DNA of 63,258 nt, filler included, from Perkinsus chesapeaki ATCC PRA-425 (lineage: Eukaryota; Protista; Perkinsozoa), in the NCBI GenBank assembly GCA_013115145.1. It is 9 parts of 9 records of this genome, joined end to end, with 100 filler letters (N's around TTAATTAATTAA, not from the genome) between each part and the next. Parts side by side here need not be neighbours in the genome. Positions count along the whole stretch, not along the records: positions 53,924 to 60,680 come from JAAPAO010001064.1; 8 more parts are not named here. One strand, 5' to 3'. A program made the translations under genes and the position numbers. The notes under the pieces were generated by a model. It ran no database searches, had not been told where the DNA came from, and worked only from the letters and a program-made list of their open reading frames with translations. Below are positions 53,924 to 60,680 of this stretch, in pieces; positions within the stretch are counted from its first letter, which is position 1, and every line of letters starts with the position of its first letter.

Positions 53924-55379
53924 GTAATTGACCCTTAGCGGTGTAGGTCTGCCCCCACCTTGCCCCCCCACTGTCAAGTACCCAGCTACGCCACTGCCCT
54001 GCAACACAAACAATTGTCACTGGGATCTAGGTGGTTAGGCGGCAGGTATTCCTGAAAGCATTGAATGGCGCGCAAGTGCATCTCGTGAGCTCGGGCAGAG
54101 TCGCGGGAGAGTGCCAGAAACACCCGTCGCCGGCCTGTATGGTCATGCAATATGGAGACAGTGGTGAGAACATGGCGCAAGTTCATGCGAATTGCATGAC
54201 CTATCGGTGCATGCATACACACATTAGCTTTGTGAACGAAACGATATCACTCATTTCAAATCAATTTCAGTAAATCGAGATTTACTTTAGTCGTATGCGC
54301 TGTTTCACCTGAGCGATTTGTTCTTCTATAGACGACTACTAAGCTATTCCGTGAGCCATTTTTTCTGTCAGCTTCCCGCTCGCTTTAAAACTATCTACCA
54401 GTTGGATCCTCCTCTTAGCTGTTTATCGGGTATTTTTTACGCTTTTCTGGACTCTGCACACTATGAAAATACCCTTCCTTGTGTACATCTGGTTGGTTAT
54501 TAATACTTGGTGCTCAAGAGCTGCTCCGTCCGGCAATTATCACTACAACGTGAGTAACTTATTGTGTATCGAGTCTCACTGGCCCGTCCCAGTGCCATTT
54601 TTCATTGTAGAGGCTGTTCAGTGCAAACCTGAAAGCACTACAATTGAGACCCTATCCCCAGCATTGTTTGTTACTGGTACGAACCCATATGAGCTTACCA
54701 ATGCTAGCCAACTTCTTCGCCAAGCTTTCGGGTGAGCCAGGAATGCCTGTCGCCCTCTGAACATTGAGGATACCATGGACTTCTTCGCTTATAACCAGCC
54801 TAGTGATATTTTGCGTACAGCTTATGGTACTTACATGGTTACCCTACGAAAAGGCTGCTGTAGGTAGTCCGATAGTCAATCCAGTTCGTGAGTGACCCAA
54901 CGGAAGACGGATCTGGAATAGTTTCATAGTATCTGTCCACTTTTCATATAAACTTCTCTCATCCTGGGCATTTACTTGTTCTCTCATGTTGAAGTACTTG
55001 CGTTTACAGTAGTTTGTGAACGCGTTACGCTATTCCTTGTAATTGTCGATACTGCCGAAATAAATGTTACTCATGCCGAACCCCACTCTCCTGTGAGCCT
55101 GCTTCGCTAGTGATCAGAACACCGAGTTGCCGGTACTCCATTGTAACTTCGACTTGATGAAAGGTAGATACGGTTATCAGTTCATCATGAACTGTTTATG
55201 AGTAGCTTTCGAGTTTTTTTACAGATCGGTTCTCCTATTGCCAGCATAATATAAGCTGGGTGTGGCTCTTCCCGCAATGCGTTTAGAACCGTTTGGCTCC
55301 CCTGCCAGGACCGGCCCTGGCACGCATGGGATCGTAGAGCGCGGCGCGAAATACAAGACTATCTGGTAGTCCGTGCCGT

Positions 55380-55401
55380 AGTACGTCACGTACTGTACGT
55401 G
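55380..55401. repeat. 22-bp 8-mer scar, X=AGTACGTG
   Basis: agtacgt-cacgtact-gtacgtg, perfect. Confidence 0.85.
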
Positions 55402-55522
55402 CCGTCCCAAAACCAAGTTGAAAGACGCCAACGACATAAAAAGCCGCGTTGAAACCAAGTTATTATCATAGAGAGGCTCGGCAAGAGCGCCCACAGTGGG
55501 CCCCACATACATAGGATGAGTA

Positions 55523-55544
55523 GTCCTGGGCCAGGACTCCTGGC
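55523..55544. repeat. 22-bp 8-mer scar, X=GTCCTGGC
   Basis: gtcctgg-gccaggac-tcctggc, perfect. Confidence 0.85.
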
Positions 55545-57020
55545 GAACCATCGACGTCACAAGGAACGGGCATACCCGATGGCTAAACTATGAGGGGGGA
55601 GCAAATGAGAGAGCATGAAGACATAGGCGGGCTCCAGGCGGCCGAGGAGCAGGCATAGGGGATACACACGGCGGGCAGGAGATGCCCGGAAGCTCAGGAG
55701 CCTTGAGTATCACCTCGCCAGCTGAGACGCGGGCACGCGTACGCCCATACTATGGGCCCCCATAGTCACTCGCTCCACATACTTCGCTTGGGTAGTGCGC
55801 ATGTTCACACTCCTGCAAGATTGATGCGTGGAAAAGTAGTTCATCCGCTAGCCATTTAAAGTATACGTGCATGCATATTCGGTGAAAGGGAATAAAAAGG
55901 CGAGATGTATCTTGTTGGCAGTTCGTTGCAATCATGAACGTGACGTTCATGTTTGCAACTGTTTGCAACGTTCAGAACGTCATGTTTATTCTCGCCACGG
56001 TCATTGGCCAGACCGTTTCAGGTCCAATATATCGCGTTTTCAGGTTTATATATAAAAATATGTTCGTTGTGGATCGTTCGGCGAAGCCATAGTCGACAGT
56101 ATCAATTTCTTTGGCAATTTTTCGATGCAATTATTAAGAAGGCTATCAGAAGGTTTCAGGAATAAGAAATATTATTGTGTGTATGTAGCGCAAGAACTCG
56201 AAGATGATATCAAAGTCAGCCTTGGCGGTAAAGACTGAAACGCCTTGCTAAGGTCGTTTCATAGCATTCTGGACTTCCCTTGCTCGCCGAGGCCTTATCT
56301 AGACCATACTTTTCCGAGTATGAGAGTGATAGAGACCAATACAAGGCGTCGTCTCGTTGTGATGCGAGAGAGACCGGGTATTATACAGACTCCCCCTCAC
56401 GCCTGAATAATAGTCTATCATAATGACGGTCTCATTGATAGAGGTGGAGCGCCTCAACGACCCTCTTGTCTCGAGGATCTCAAAGCTACGGGTCTTGGGT
56501 CAGATTCTGAACCAGCTCAGCTAGATAATGAATTGGCGCAAGTCGTGACCGTTCTTTTTTAGCTTACAGGGCCCCTTTGGCCCTAATTATCGGCCCGATA
56601 ATTAGGGCCCAAGCCCGATATCGGGTGTCTCGTACGAGTCACTGATATTTAGTGGTAATTGTCATGAATATCTGTTTTCTATTGTTCCTATTGTCGCTCA
56701 AAATCCTAACTGTTCGTCCGCGTACTTAGTGCGTACTAGCTTAACAAAGGGAGAGGGAGCTCGCAGCACGGAACCGAACAGCGAGGAAGACTTGATACGA
56801 CCTGGTAAGATCAAACTGGCGAGATCGTTCTTCTCCATTGTGGTTTTTCGTTATCGAGCCCTCCATGAGAGCCGTAGGATGTGAGCCCTGTTCAAAAACA
56901 TCAGTCTACTTGCGTTTGTAAGTAAATGACTTCAGAGGGAGCTGTTTGACCAACAGTAGCATGTGGTGCAGGGGGAAGTCGTCCTTGAGGAGGCGTTACA
57001 GGCGTGGCACCGGCAATTGA

Positions 57021-57081
57021 ATTGACGACGGCCGTCATTTACCGAATTGCCGCAATTCGGTAAATGACGGCCGTCGTCAAT
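57021..57081. repeat. Perfect palindrome, 30-bp arms, 1-nt centre
   Basis: 57021-57050 is the exact reverse complement of 57052-57081. Confidence 0.95.
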
Positions 57082-58502: not shown

Positions 58503-58524
58503 TTCTGATTATCAGAATCTGATA
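58503..58524. repeat. 22-bp 8-mer scar, X=TTCTGATA
   Basis: ttctgat-tatcagaa-tctgata, perfect. Confidence 0.85.
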
Positions 58525-58655
58525 GTACGCAACTATTATCAGTAAAACCTTGATATGTTTGAGACGTATAAAGGCAAACGTAAATTCTCATGGTAAAACC
58601 CTTCCACTTCAGATCGTATGAGACTCTCATAATGAGACAGAAGATGTTCAACGGC

Positions 58656-58677
58656 ATCGACTGAGTCGATTCGACTC
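58656..58677. repeat. 22-bp 8-mer scar, X=ATCGACTC
   Basis: atcgact-gagtcgat-tcgactc, perfect. Confidence 0.85.
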
Positions 58678-60379
58678 TGTCGCTTGAGACTTACTCGTAT
58701 CTGCAGAGTCGGAAGTTCAGACCGTAGCGAGTATGATTTAGACGATTTTGTAAAAGCCAGATTCCAGACTGCAATTGATCGGCAGTCGATCATCGACTGT
58801 AATTTACATCCATTCCATCCGCCTTTGCCGTTCTTCCCTCAATATCAGCCTTTTCCCAAATCCTTCCCTACGCCGCCCTTCTCTCCAGTAAATCCCTTAC
58901 CCTTTCCTTATCTCCCATATCAGGATCATTGATGCGTTTCCTTATTGTTGTTATCCCTCCACAGTGGAGGGTAATACAGTACGAAGTTAGGTATCATTCC
59001 GAATAGGTCTCCTAACTCAAGAGTCCTGATTGGGAAGTCGAGACTCGCCTGGCACCGGAATGTTCGAACCGAACCTGAAGTTCAGGTTCTTAGGGCACAG
59101 TTGGCACGTCCCCGGTTACCGGTTACGGTCCGTAACTAGTCGGACTTCATTGTAGCCGCTTCAACTGAGACAAACTCAGGCCTTCATCTTGGACTGCATT
59201 CTCCGCCGAGCGGGCAACCGTTGTTTAGTGGTAACACCGCTCTGTATGTCCAACTTTTACCCACCGTAAGGGTTATAATGGGCGGCCCATTTTGGGCGTT
59301 TGCAGGTGGTGCAAGAAGGTGAGCCTTGGGGCTTCTTGGCCAGAAGTACTGGATATCTGATAGCCGCTACCATAACAGAAATTTCGGATGACTTTTGCGT
59401 ACTCTCCGAGTCGGAGACTGCGACTTAAATAAGGGATTCGCGTGGCCCCGGCCCCGTCCTGACAATGGCATACTACCGCACTAATAATACTCTATCGCGG
59501 CAGCCTCACAGTGCGCCTGCTCCGCGAATCGAGCATCTCTGTTTCTCCCCGTTCAGTGGGAAGAAACGATGAGATGTTGAGGTGGGCCACACCATGGTAT
59601 GTCTTGTGCCCGCGAATCTCTTCTGTCATATACAGACTATATGATAAAGTTATGTCTGTAGCATACTTTGTGCTTGTTCCTCATTGGTACGCCAGTGATC
59701 CGAGGGGTATCAACACTGTTTGATACCCCTCACTGAGGGGTATCTGAGGTTCCCTCAGATCACTGGCGTTTCAGTACCAGAAATGCAAACAGCGAAATGT
59801 AAAGTCTTAGTCGGTTACTACTGTAGTTATACTACAATCGCCGATTGTTAATCGGTTACCGTTCGAGTCGAAAGCTTCGATCCTTTGATCATCAAAGGCT
59901 TTGTTAATCAAAGTTTGATTCAAAGCCTGAGAACCCTTCAGTGGCTCCGCAGAATGAAGGACCATTTTGACAGGTGTCTACAGACTGTTGCAGTTTGCTA
60001 CAAATGACACAGACGCATGAGGCAGGAGGCTTTGGGCTTGAGCCTAGTGTTCGCAGTGAGTACGCGCGCTCTTGGATTCTGTGGCCTTGGCGGTGCCGGC
60101 ATTCGGAGCGACGCGTGCCCCGTTCCCGGAGTTTATATAGCGTGAGGAATCAGCTGGTAGCTAACCTGTATTAATGCCTCTTATAATCACTTTACTTGTC
60201 ATACTTATTACCAATGCTGTTAAGTGCTAGGAAGAGCCGCCCAGTCAGGGCTTAGAAGTGTCACGGTAATACCGCGAATAGAGCTGATACTATCAGGTGA
60301 TGAACTCTAAGGAATAACTGTTACTCCTCTGTTGCGTTACACAACAAAGGAGCTTGAGTAGTCAATATTGCAGCCCCGG

Positions 60380-60401
60380 AGCTGTAATACAGCTGCTGTA
60401 T
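60380..60401. repeat. 22-bp 8-mer scar, X=AGCTGTAT
   Basis: agctgta-atacagct-gctgtat, perfect. Confidence 0.85.
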
Positions 60402-60680
60402 CCAGATTCTGGATACCAGAAGCGCACTATCTGCACCTAACGTCTACACGCATGCACAGTCTTAGTGCGCAACTGATTGATATTGAGCTCCGAAGCTGTA
60501 GAAGGAAATTCCTTCAAAGAATGGCGAAGGTTTAAAACAATAGGCAACCCTTCTGAAGGGTTCCTTCAGGGCATAGCAAGTTGTGAGGAAATCATCAGTT
60601 TAACAATGATAGTGGCCGCTTAATTGCTGCCTTGCTCAGTTCTCTTCGACAAGACGTCAAAGAAGTGGCGGTAGATCGGC

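What the first reader, a model, noticed from the sequence alone, without database searches (positions are those of the whole stretch)
53924..60680. A 6.7-kb contig saturated with scars (about 3 per kb)
Canonical or near-canonical scars start at 55179, 55380, 55523, 55743 (+1 nt), 57222, 57474, 57771, 58356, 58503, 58617, 58656, 58777, 59403, 59815, 59834, 60380, 60400, 60501 and 60547. Single 1-nt-centred palindromes lie at 58955-58971, 59071-59089 and 59122-59136. Hundreds of bases of this contig are made of scars. Inference: either an insertion hotspot or old unconstrained DNA that has accumulated scars like a clock.
Basis: partly seen in the sequence, partly recalled or inferred. Interest (0 to 1): 0.8.

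Follow-up and report, generated by a model that had tools for sequence, protein, structure and literature searches.

The report
Dense hairpin-type transposon excision footprints
This non-coding stretch of a small eukaryotic genome is packed with about 30 stereotyped 22-base "scars", each the mark that a cut-and-paste (hAT-like) transposon leaves on jumping out, so here transposon traffic itself has built roughly 8% of the DNA.

Summary
The piece holds 34 one-base-centred palindromes with arms of 7 or more, against 0.44 in shuffles. It holds no even palindrome of that size.

The canonical scar is 22 nt: X[1-7] + reverse complement of the 8-mer X + X[2-8]. That is a net 14-nt insertion at an 8-bp site.

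This is the predicted product of hAT-type chemistry. It needs an 8-bp target duplication and flank hairpins offset by 1 nt. The two unfolded hairpin tails then anneal over their 8 complementary bases.

Three tests support this:
- Four long atypical palindromes have the predicted partner half-site with no mismatch, 8 to 32 nt away (0.04 expected by chance).
- Four scars in one copy of a local repeat are exact 14-nt insertions relative to its paralogue.
- Contigs from four runs of two studies carry the scars unchanged.

I count about 31 to 33 events, some of them nested and of mixed age.

No transposon or transposase lies in the piece, and the organism is unknown. The footprint chemistry is known. 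The stereotyped full-length form and the saturating density appear to be undescribed.

The parts
55179..55200 (.). near-canonical scar, X=AGTTCATG, 13/14
55380..55401 (.). canonical scar, X=AGTACGTG, 14/14
55523..55544 (.). canonical scar, X=GTCCTGGC, 14/14
55743..55765 (.). scar with one extra C in a C run (23 nt), X=GCCCATAG; the predicted partner half-site is exact at 55758
55935..55981 (.). long-tailed scar, X=TGAACGTC. Left centre 55942 (arm 17 with 1 mismatch), right centre 55974. It contains a 10-nt tandem duplicate, TGTTTGCAAC.
56587..56625 (.). long-tailed scar, X=TTATCGGG. Left centre 56594 (arm 15, or 19 with 1 mismatch). The right half-site ATATCGGG is exact at 56618. The right tail is shortened by 3 nt.
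57012..57058 (.). long-tailed scar, X=GGCAATTC. The left half-site GGCAATTG ends at 57019. The right centre is 57051, in a perfect 61-nt palindrome (57021-57081, arms 30). The tails are joined at a 4-nt microhomology, ATTG.
57222..57243 (.). near-canonical scar, X=(A/T)CGCCGAC, 13/14
57399..57420 (.). probable decayed scar in TG-rich sequence, 12/14
57474..57495 (.). near-canonical scar, X=GTTGTGAG, 13/14
57771..57792 (.). near-canonical scar, X=CTACTGTA, 13/14, inside repeat copy A
58356..58377 (.). canonical scar, X=CACTAGAA, 14/14
58503..58524 (.). canonical scar, X=TTCTGATA, 14/14
58617..58638 (.). near-canonical scar, X=TATGAGA(C/G), 13/14
58656..58677 (.). canonical scar, X=ATCGACTC, 14/14
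58777..58798 (.). near-canonical scar, X=GATCGACT, 13/14
58955..58971 (.). orphan odd palindrome (arm 8); no partner half-site found within 120 nt
59071..59089 (.). orphan odd palindrome (arm 9); no partner found
59122..59136 (.). orphan odd palindrome (arm 7); no partner found
59403..59424 (.). near-canonical scar, X=TCTCCGAC, 13/14
59689..59769 (.). older long-arm palindrome. Once the inner event is removed it is 56 nt, with arms of about 27 nt, 1 mismatch and a 1-nt indel.
59726..59758 (.). younger long-tailed scar nested in the right arm of the older palindrome, X=CCCCTCAG. Left centre 59733 (arm 11). The partner half-site at 59751 has 1 mismatch.
59815..59836 (.). near-canonical scar, X=TTACTACA, 12/14; overlaps the next scar by 3 nt
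59834..59855 (.). near-canonical scar, X=ACAATCGG, 13/14
59882..59898 (.). odd palindrome (arm 8) abutting the nested pair that follows
59891..59926 (.). outer scar (12/14), visible only after the inner scar 59899-59920 is collapsed: a scar inside a scar
59899..59920 (.). inner near-canonical scar, X=CTTTGATT, 13/14
60380..60401 (.). canonical scar, X=AGCTGTAT, 14/14; a 14-nt insertion relative to repeat copy A
60400..60421 (.). near-canonical scar, X=ATCCAGAA, 13/14; overlaps the previous scar by 2 nt; a 14-nt insertion relative to copy A
60501..60522 (.). near-canonical scar, X=GAAGGAAT, 13/14; shows as a clean 14-column gap in copy A
60547..60568 (.). near-canonical scar, X=ACCCTTCA, 13/14; a 14-nt insertion relative to copy A
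57740..58048 (+). repeat copy A. Part of it (57905-58091) is high-copy, with read-contig depth about 29,000 against about 100. It serves as the unscarred comparator.
60291..60590 (-). repeat copy B, inverted and about 72% identical to A; carries four scars
53924..55178 (.). scar-free 1.25 kb (P about 7e-4 at the local rate); content unknown

Best explanation
The scars are footprints left by a cut-and-paste DNA transposon of the hAT type that inserted and later excised.

Inferred pathway:
1. Insertion duplicates an 8-bp target, X.
2. At excision the transposase nicks one base inside each flank and seals each flank into a hairpin. That is why every palindrome has a single unpaired centre base, which is the complement of the target base that sat next to the element.
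3. The host does not clip the hairpins at the tip. It opens or resects them far from the tip (8 to 30 nt or more), giving long 3' tails.
4. The left tail reads X[1-7] followed by the reverse complement of X. The right tail is complementary to that same 8-mer, so the two tails anneal over 8 bases.
5. Gaps are filled and flaps trimmed. The product is X[1-7] + rc(X) + X[2-8], which is 22 nt where 8 stood before (+14 nt).
6. When the tails pair elsewhere, or are joined without pairing, longer single palindromes result.

Repeated cycles over a long time produced about 31-33 events in 5.4 kb, some inside older ones. They add about 535 nt, which is about 8% of the piece.

Shown here: the geometry, its excess over chance, its nature as an insertion, and its presence in independent reads. 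Inferred: the enzyme family, the hairpin intermediates and the repair route.
For: - **Fixed geometry.** Odd palindromes only, 34 against 0.44 expected. Centres are exactly 7 nt apart in 8 of 8 strict pairs, and no even palindrome has arms of 7 or more.
- **Excess over chance.** 22 scars score 12/14 or better, against 0.02 expected.
- **Centre bases pair as predicted.** Each centre pairs with the far end of the scar, so arms are 7 rather than 6. This needs an 8-bp duplicated site and a 1-nt offset.
- **Prediction test on atypical palindromes.** The model's partner half-site, c(x1)+x2..x8, is present with 0 of 8 mismatches at 55758, 55974, 56618 and 57019, and with 1 mismatch at 59751. About 0.04 exact matches are expected by chance.
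- **Microhomology joint.** At 57012-57058 the two tails meet at a 4-nt microhomology, ATTG.
- **Paralogue test.** Four scars in repeat copy B are 14-nt insertions relative to copy A, and collapsing them restores gap-free colinearity.
- **Nested events.** Nested events resolve on collapse.
- **Target preference.** It is weakly palindromic, nTYnnRAn. Y at position 3 / R at position 6 is 31 of 44 (p = 0.01). T at 2 / A at 7 is 17 of 44 (p = 0.09). The direction matches the nTnnnnAn preference and 8-bp duplications reported for Hermes (PMC10368747).
- **Literature.** Ac/Ds footprints are palindromic insertions centred on the complement of the base next to the element. Arms reach 20 nt in budding yeast, and that paper cites one on microhomology-dependent repair of the transposon-induced hairpins (PMC5873905).
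- **Independent reads.** The scars are identical in read-contigs from two studies.
Against: - No intact element with an 8-bp duplication and terminal inverted repeats lies in the piece.
- No transposase fragment was found in any open frame.
- No filled or empty allele of any scar site was seen in the read-contigs.
- MULE elements also make flank hairpins and 8-10-bp duplications (PMC5499845). I could not find their nick offset, so the superfamily is not settled.
- The T2/A7 target bias is not significant.
- The mismatches are not symmetric: the deviating copy is the third arm 9 times, the first arm 2 times and the middle 8-mer once. The symmetric model does not predict this.
- The 1-nt offset of hAT nicking comes from my own knowledge of the Hermes work plus the wording in PMC5873905. 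I could not read the primary paper here.
Confidence: 0.78

Rival explanations
1. The chemistry is the same, but it is programmed. The sequenced DNA is somatic, and a domesticated hairpin-forming transposase removes germline-limited elements every generation. A scar is left at each removal site, as with ciliate internal eliminated sequences but imprecise.
For: The density is very high, about 5 per kb, with no resident element in 6.7 kb. The scars lie in apparently non-coding DNA.
Against: - Scars are nested inside older, partly decayed scars, and mismatch classes are graded. That looks like accumulation over evolutionary time rather than one developmental pass.
- Joints vary in form.
- No read-contig shows an element at a scar, although contigs drop rare variants.
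- GC is about 47% and high-copy interspersed repeats are present, unlike typical ciliate somatic DNA (my own knowledge).
Confidence: 0.06
2. The footprints come from another hairpin-forming superfamily with 8-bp duplications, such as a MULE (Mutator-like) element, rather than hAT.
For: MULEs form flank hairpins and make 8-10-bp duplications; Muta1 makes 8 or 9 bp (PMC5499845).
Against: - Muta1 excision in yeast is more than 90% precise (PMC5499845).
- The duplicated site here is uniformly 8 bp, with no 9- or 10-bp class.
- The odd centre matches the hAT footprint rule stated in PMC5873905.
Confidence: 0.08
3. No transposon is involved. The scars are inverted templated insertions made during break repair or replication. 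A 3' end snaps back on itself or switches template, copies the complementary strand, and switches back (polymerase-theta-type or template-switch mutation).
For: Such events do produce direct-inverted-direct triplets near breaks (general knowledge; SD-MMEJ papers listed). One locus contains a templated 10-nt duplicate (55950-55969).
Against: - Template switching has no reason to give a fixed 7/8/7 geometry, an obligatory single-base centre, or centres exactly 7 nt apart in every strict pair.
- It does not predict the exact partner half-sites of the long palindromes.
- It does not predict a palindromic target preference.
Confidence: 0.05
4. The scars are an assembly or sequencing artefact, or the contig is chimeric.
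For: Palindromes can break or confuse assemblers. Some read-contigs end at the centre of the 61-nt palindrome. No single read-contig spans the whole piece.
Against: Read-contigs of 384-2106 nt from four runs, two samples and two studies carry the scars with 0 differences at about 80-140x depth. The scars lie inside those contigs, not at their joins.
Confidence: 0.01

Closest known systems
Excision footprints of hAT transposons (Ac/Ds, Tam3, Hermes, Ascot-1)
   Same: Both have an 8-bp target duplication kept on each side. Both have palindromic (P-nucleotide) additions centred on the complement of the base that adjoined the element. Both are explained by hairpins on the flanking DNA (PMC5873905; PMC10368747).
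   Different: Reported footprints are heterogeneous and mostly a few bases long. Arms are 3 nt or less in Candida and up to 20 nt in a minority of yeast events. Here one product dominates, the complete inverted 8-mer, and it occurs about 5 times per kb. In a rice genome comparison only 94 excisions were recognised, with varied footprints (PMC4423477).
P nucleotides at V(D)J coding joints (RAG, Transib)
   Same: A hairpin forms on the retained DNA and is opened off-centre, so the opposite strand is read out as a palindromic addition.
   Different: RAG and Transib nick exactly at the border, which gives even palindromes, and the additions are 1-4 nt. Here the centre is a single unpaired base and the additions are 8 to 30 nt. 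This comparison rests on my own knowledge and was not tested here.
Microhomology-mediated joining of hairpin-capped ends in yeast (Yu et al. 2004, cited in PMC5873905)
   Same: Transposon-induced hairpins are processed by host factors and joined through microhomology.
   Different: That is an experimental single-locus system. Here it is a natural, genome-embedded record in which the 8-nt inverted target itself serves as the microhomology. I could not read the paper.
Ciliate internal eliminated sequences removed by domesticated transposases
   Same: A comparably high density of excision sites per kb.
   Different: Those use piggyBac-type enzymes, are mostly precise, and leave a TA or a short junction. 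No palindromic scar is known for them (papers listed). Nothing here shows a germline/soma difference.

Membership tests
hAT-type excision footprint | An 8-bp target-site duplication is retained around the excision site | tested here: met
   The scar geometry requires an 8-mer X. The net insert is 14 nt, and the paralogue shows single-copy X-like sequence at the four sites.
hAT-type excision footprint | Palindromic additions centred on the complement of the base that adjoined the element (1-nt hairpin offset) | tested here: met
   Only odd palindromes occur. Both centres pair with the far scar ends (arms of 7 or more). No even palindrome has arms of 7 or more.
hAT-type excision footprint | Target preference nTnnnnAn | tested here: inconclusive
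   T at position 2 / A at position 7 is 17 of 44, against 27% background (p = 0.09). A clearer preference is Y at 3 / R at 6, 31 of 44 (p = 0.01).
hAT-type excision footprint | hAT elements (terminal inverted repeats, transposase with BED and hAT dimerisation domains) are present in the same genome | not testable with these tools
   Only this 6.7-kb piece is available. It holds no duplication-plus-inverted-repeat element and no Pfam hit.
hAT-type excision footprint | The same site is seen filled by an element in another allele, strain or species | not testable with these tools
   The read-contigs show only the scar form. Raw reads and other strains are not available.
Templated insertion by polymerase-theta or template switching | Variable insert length and variable template distance, with no fixed duplicated site | tested here: not met
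   Centre spacing is exactly 7 in 8 of 8 strict pairs, and the canonical length is 22 nt in 22 or more cases.
Programmed DNA elimination junctions | A germline form carries an element where the somatic form has the junction | not testable with these tools
   No germline data are available. Nested and decayed scars argue for evolutionary accumulation.

The most novel reading that the evidence does not exclude
In this organism, insertion-excision cycles of a hairpin-forming transposase are a leading mutational process. Each cycle adds a stereotyped 14 nt because the host opens or resects hairpins far from the tip and joins them through the inverted target itself, perhaps because near-tip hairpin opening or classical end joining is weak or absent. 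Scars of all ages make up a tenth or more of non-coding DNA. They create perfect palindromes of up to 61 nt de novo and can serve as a molecular clock and as a natural read-out of the host's break-repair pathway.
Probability: 0.45. Interest if true: 0.75.

Novelty: new variant of a known kind. Interest (0 to 1): 0.62.

Why it matters
- **A new view of transposon impact.** If the pattern holds genome-wide, DNA transposons shape this genome more by the marks they leave than by their resident copies. At 14 nt per visit, the marks already sum to about 8-10% of this locus.
- **A record of repair.** The scars are a self-documenting record of how the organism repairs hairpin-capped breaks. The record can be read without experiments and compared with the organism's repair-gene inventory.
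- **A dating tool.** The graded decay of the scars gives an internal clock for non-coding DNA.
- **A source of hairpins.** Nested scars generate long perfect hairpins from scratch. This is a possible source of hairpin RNAs and of fragile or recombinogenic sites.
- **A practical nuisance.** The palindromes break short-read contigs and can mislead aligners and repeat finders.

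Tried and rejected
- **Coding content.** No ORF exceeds 128 aa. Ten stop-free frames gave no Pfam family above noise.
- **RNA genes.** No tRNA was found. Rfam gave only sub-threshold miRNA-hairpin matches on the 61-nt palindrome, which I take as a trivial consequence of the hairpin.
- **Intact element search.** I looked for 8-bp direct repeats flanking inverted ends. The only hit was the interior of the 61-nt palindrome.
- **Organism and further loci.** Exact look-ups of two ATG ORFs found nothing. The word-based homologue search of ORF 54463-54732 found nothing. 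The first Atlas search gave only sub-threshold feature hits to Perkinsozoa hypothetical proteins (0.88 and 0.86). The second gave nothing. I treat the organism as unknown.
- **Other repeat copies.** One scan of metagenome contigs for the core of the high-copy repeat found nothing.
- **Literature.** Nine full-text searches found no description of genome-saturating palindromic scars. Two key papers, PMC321453 and PMC4105704, are not held.
- **Repeat pair A/B as transposon ends.** I considered whether copies A and B are the terminal repeats of one large element. I rejected this because there is no matching target duplication and the ends are not inverted repeats of each other at their tips.
- **A 7-bp duplication model.** Rejected, because the left centre is the complement of the last base of the scar, and only an 8-bp site explains that.

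Full report
**What is there**

The piece 53924-60680 is 6757 nt with about 47% G+C. Its longest stop-free frame is 128 aa. It has no Pfam, tRNA or Rfam content above noise, so it reads as non-coding eukaryotic DNA.

A scan for exact palindromes gave a very one-sided picture:
- 34 palindromes with a single unpaired centre base and arms of 7 or more.
- A mean of 0.44 and a maximum of 3 in 200 dinucleotide-preserving shuffles.
- No even palindrome of that size.
- Arm lengths fall off as 20, 8 and 3 for 7, 8 and 9 nt. That is what chance extension of a fixed 7-nt arm gives.
- Among centres with arms of 6 or more, eight pairs lie exactly 7 nt apart. No other spacing is enriched, and no shuffle produced such a pair.

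**Anatomy of the scar**

Two 15-nt palindromes offset by 7 nt make a 22-mer of the form X[1-7] + reverse complement of X[1-8] + X[2-8], for some 8-mer X. An example is 55380-55401, AGTACGT CACGTACT GTACGTG.

I scored every 22-mer against the 14 pairings this form implies:

| Score | Observed | Mean of 100 shuffles |
|---|---|---|
| 14/14 | 6 | 0 |
| 13/14 | 12 | 0 |
| 12/14 | 4 | 0.02 |
| 11/14 | 10 | 0.23 |
| 10/14 | 22 | 2.2 |
| 9/14 | 35 | 12.6 |

Some of the 9/14 to 11/14 excess is shadow from stronger scars. Several events were missed (see the parts list).

**The scars are real and are insertions**

Read-contigs from four public runs (two samples, two studies) cover the scars with no differences. 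They include pieces of 1120, 1171 and 2105 nt.

The piece also holds two diverged, inverted copies of a repeat of about 310 bp. Copy A is 57740-58048 (+) and copy B is 60291-60590 (-). Aligned raw, B shows a clean 14-column insertion at the scar 60501-60522 and disorder around the others. After the scars are collapsed in silico to X, B aligns to A without gaps through all four sites. Each scar is therefore a 14-nt addition to a pre-existing 8-bp site.

**Mechanism**

The form of the scar is what hAT-type excision predicts.
- hAT elements duplicate 8 bp on insertion (PMC10368747).
- On excision the flanks are sealed into hairpins.

With a nick one base inside the flank (my knowledge of the Hermes work, which I could not read here), the left hairpin reads x1..x7, c(x8), c(x7)..c(x1). 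In top-strand sense the right hairpin reads c(x8)..c(x2), c(x1), x2..x8.

Suppose both hairpins are opened or resected at least 8 nt from the tip. The two 3' tails then share the complete inverted 8-mer and can anneal over it. Fill-in and flap removal then give exactly the 22-mer.

A 7-bp site cannot explain why the left centre base is the complement of the last base of the scar. A border nick without offset would give even palindromes, and none occur.

**A prediction test**

If the tails sometimes join elsewhere, a long single palindrome should still have the other half-site nearby: c(x1) followed by x2..x8, or x1..x7 followed by c(x8).

For the twelve odd palindromes outside canonical scars, I searched 120 nt on the appropriate side. 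Exact 8-of-8 partners were found for four of them:

| Palindrome centre | Partner half-site | Centre distance |
|---|---|---|
| 55750 | 55758 | 8 nt (one extra C) |
| 55942 | 55974 | 32 nt |
| 56594 | 56618 | 24 nt |
| 57051 | ends at 57019 | 32 nt |

A fifth, 59733, has a partner at 59751 with one mismatch. About 0.04 exact matches are expected by chance.

At 57012-57058 the left tail (GAATTG) and the 31-nt right tail meet at a 4-nt microhomology, ATTG. This produces the perfect 61-nt palindrome at 57021-57081.

At 59689-59769, removing the inner event leaves a 56-nt palindrome with one mismatch and one 1-nt indel. That is an older long-tailed scar hit by a later event. Collapsing 59899-59920 likewise reveals an enclosing scar at 59891-59926.

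Five palindromes have no recognisable partner: 58955, 59071 and 59122, plus the two arm-6 cases at 55495 and 60290. They may be joints in which the other copy was deleted, or they may have decayed.

**How many, how old, where**

I count 24 canonical or near-canonical scars (including the +1 variant), 4 long-tailed scars with partners, 1 older long palindrome and 4 orphans. They add about 535 nt in total. That is 7.9% of the piece and 9.9% of the scarred 5.4 kb.

Perfect, one-mismatch and two-mismatch classes are all populated, and the mismatches are 7 transitions to 5 transversions. This fits continuing formation with neutral decay.

Within 55179-60568 the spacing of 31 events is exponential (CV 0.94, KS p = 0.87), so I see no extra clustering. 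The first 1255 nt carry no scar (P about 7e-4). That stretch is either constrained or younger. Its only notable feature is an ORF with a signal-peptide-like start, which has no homologues.

The inferred targets show a weak palindromic preference, nTYnnRAn. It points the same way as the nTnnnnAn of Hermes but is not significant at positions 2 and 7.

**What does not fit, or is missing**

No element, terminal repeat or transposase fragment lies in the piece. No filled or empty allele appears in the read-contigs.

MULEs also form flank hairpins with 8-10-bp duplications (PMC5499845), so the superfamily call is hAT-like rather than proven hAT.

In 12 scars where a majority vote is possible, the deviating copy is the third arm 9 times, the first arm 2 times and the middle 8-mer once (chi-square p = 0.009; third against first arm p = 0.065). 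Five of the nine lie at the base right after the inverted 8-mer. The scar is symmetric, so this polarity is unexplained. It may be noise, or errors made at formation with a consistent orientation.

**Rivals**

- **Programmed elimination in a somatic genome.** This would explain the density and the lack of resident elements. It fits poorly with nested, decayed scars and with the composition.
- **Template switching or snap-back synthesis.** This can make direct-inverted-direct triplets. It predicts neither the fixed geometry, nor the single-base centre, nor the exact partner half-sites.
- **Artefact.** This is excluded for the scars themselves by independent reads. The continuity of the contig across two repeats is not independently shown.

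**Comparison with what is known, and novelty**

The chemistry is textbook. What differs is the outcome and the scale. One full-length product dominates, where reported hAT footprints are short and heterogeneous. There are about 5 recognisable footprints per kb. In a rice genome comparison, only 94 excisions, with varied footprints, were recognised across the aligned genomes (PMC4423477).

Nine full-text searches found no report of such genome-embedded scars. This is an absence in the held library only, and the organism is unknown to me. I therefore class the finding as a new variant of a known kind.

**Organism**

The organism is not identified. Read-contig totals of 44-99 Mb and a local depth of about 100x suggest a small eukaryotic genome. 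One Atlas feature search pointed weakly to Perkinsozoa, at 0.88 and 0.86, below the tool's own reliability line. I give this no weight beyond a lead.

Noticed in passing
window 57905-58091 (wider: 57718-58091): High-copy interspersed repeat. Summed read-contig depth is about 29,000 against about 100 for the flanks, and up to about 88,000 at 57969, where nearly all other copies read T for C. It has no terminal inverted repeats, ORF, tRNA or Rfam match. Its family is unknown.
   Followed up: partly
window 57750-57806: The 15-mer TATGTCCCGAAGGGC occurs twice, 40 nt apart, in repeat copy A but only once in copy B. After the scar between them is collapsed, this is a 25-nt tandem duplication, a different kind of event from the scars.
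   Followed up: partly
window 60318-60345 (copy B) against 58010-58020 (copy A): Copy B has a 22-nt insertion relative to copy A that is not a canonical scar. Its right part looks like a right half-scar (GAGTAACA GTTATTC, 1 mismatch) and its left part is scrambled. It is probably a further complex footprint.
   Followed up: partly
window 60045-60213: The read-contigs carry a second form of this 169-nt stretch with 14 differences (about 8%) at equal depth in all runs. It is either a very divergent second allele or a close paralogue.
   Followed up: no
near-canonical scars across 55179-60568: The mismatches are polar. The third arm deviates 9 times, the first arm 2 times and the middle 8-mer once. 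Five of the nine fall on the first base after the inverted 8-mer. A symmetric mechanism does not predict this.
   Followed up: partly
window 57006-57096: The 61-nt perfect palindrome draws sub-threshold Rfam matches to plant miRNA precursor families (best 37 bits against a gathering score of 90). This is a by-product of the hairpin. It does show that nested scars create miRNA-precursor-like hairpins de novo.
   Followed up: no
window 53924-55178: Scar-free 1.25 kb. It contains an ATG ORF (54463-54735) with a signal-peptide-like N-terminus and a possible GTGAGT...AG short intron. No homologue or family was found.
   Followed up: partly
window 56778: A GGC insertion variant, with nearby substitutions at 56792 and 56801, appears in a minority of read-contigs in all four runs. 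The region 56596-56969 has 3-5 times the flanking depth, so it is a low-copy repeat.
   Followed up: no
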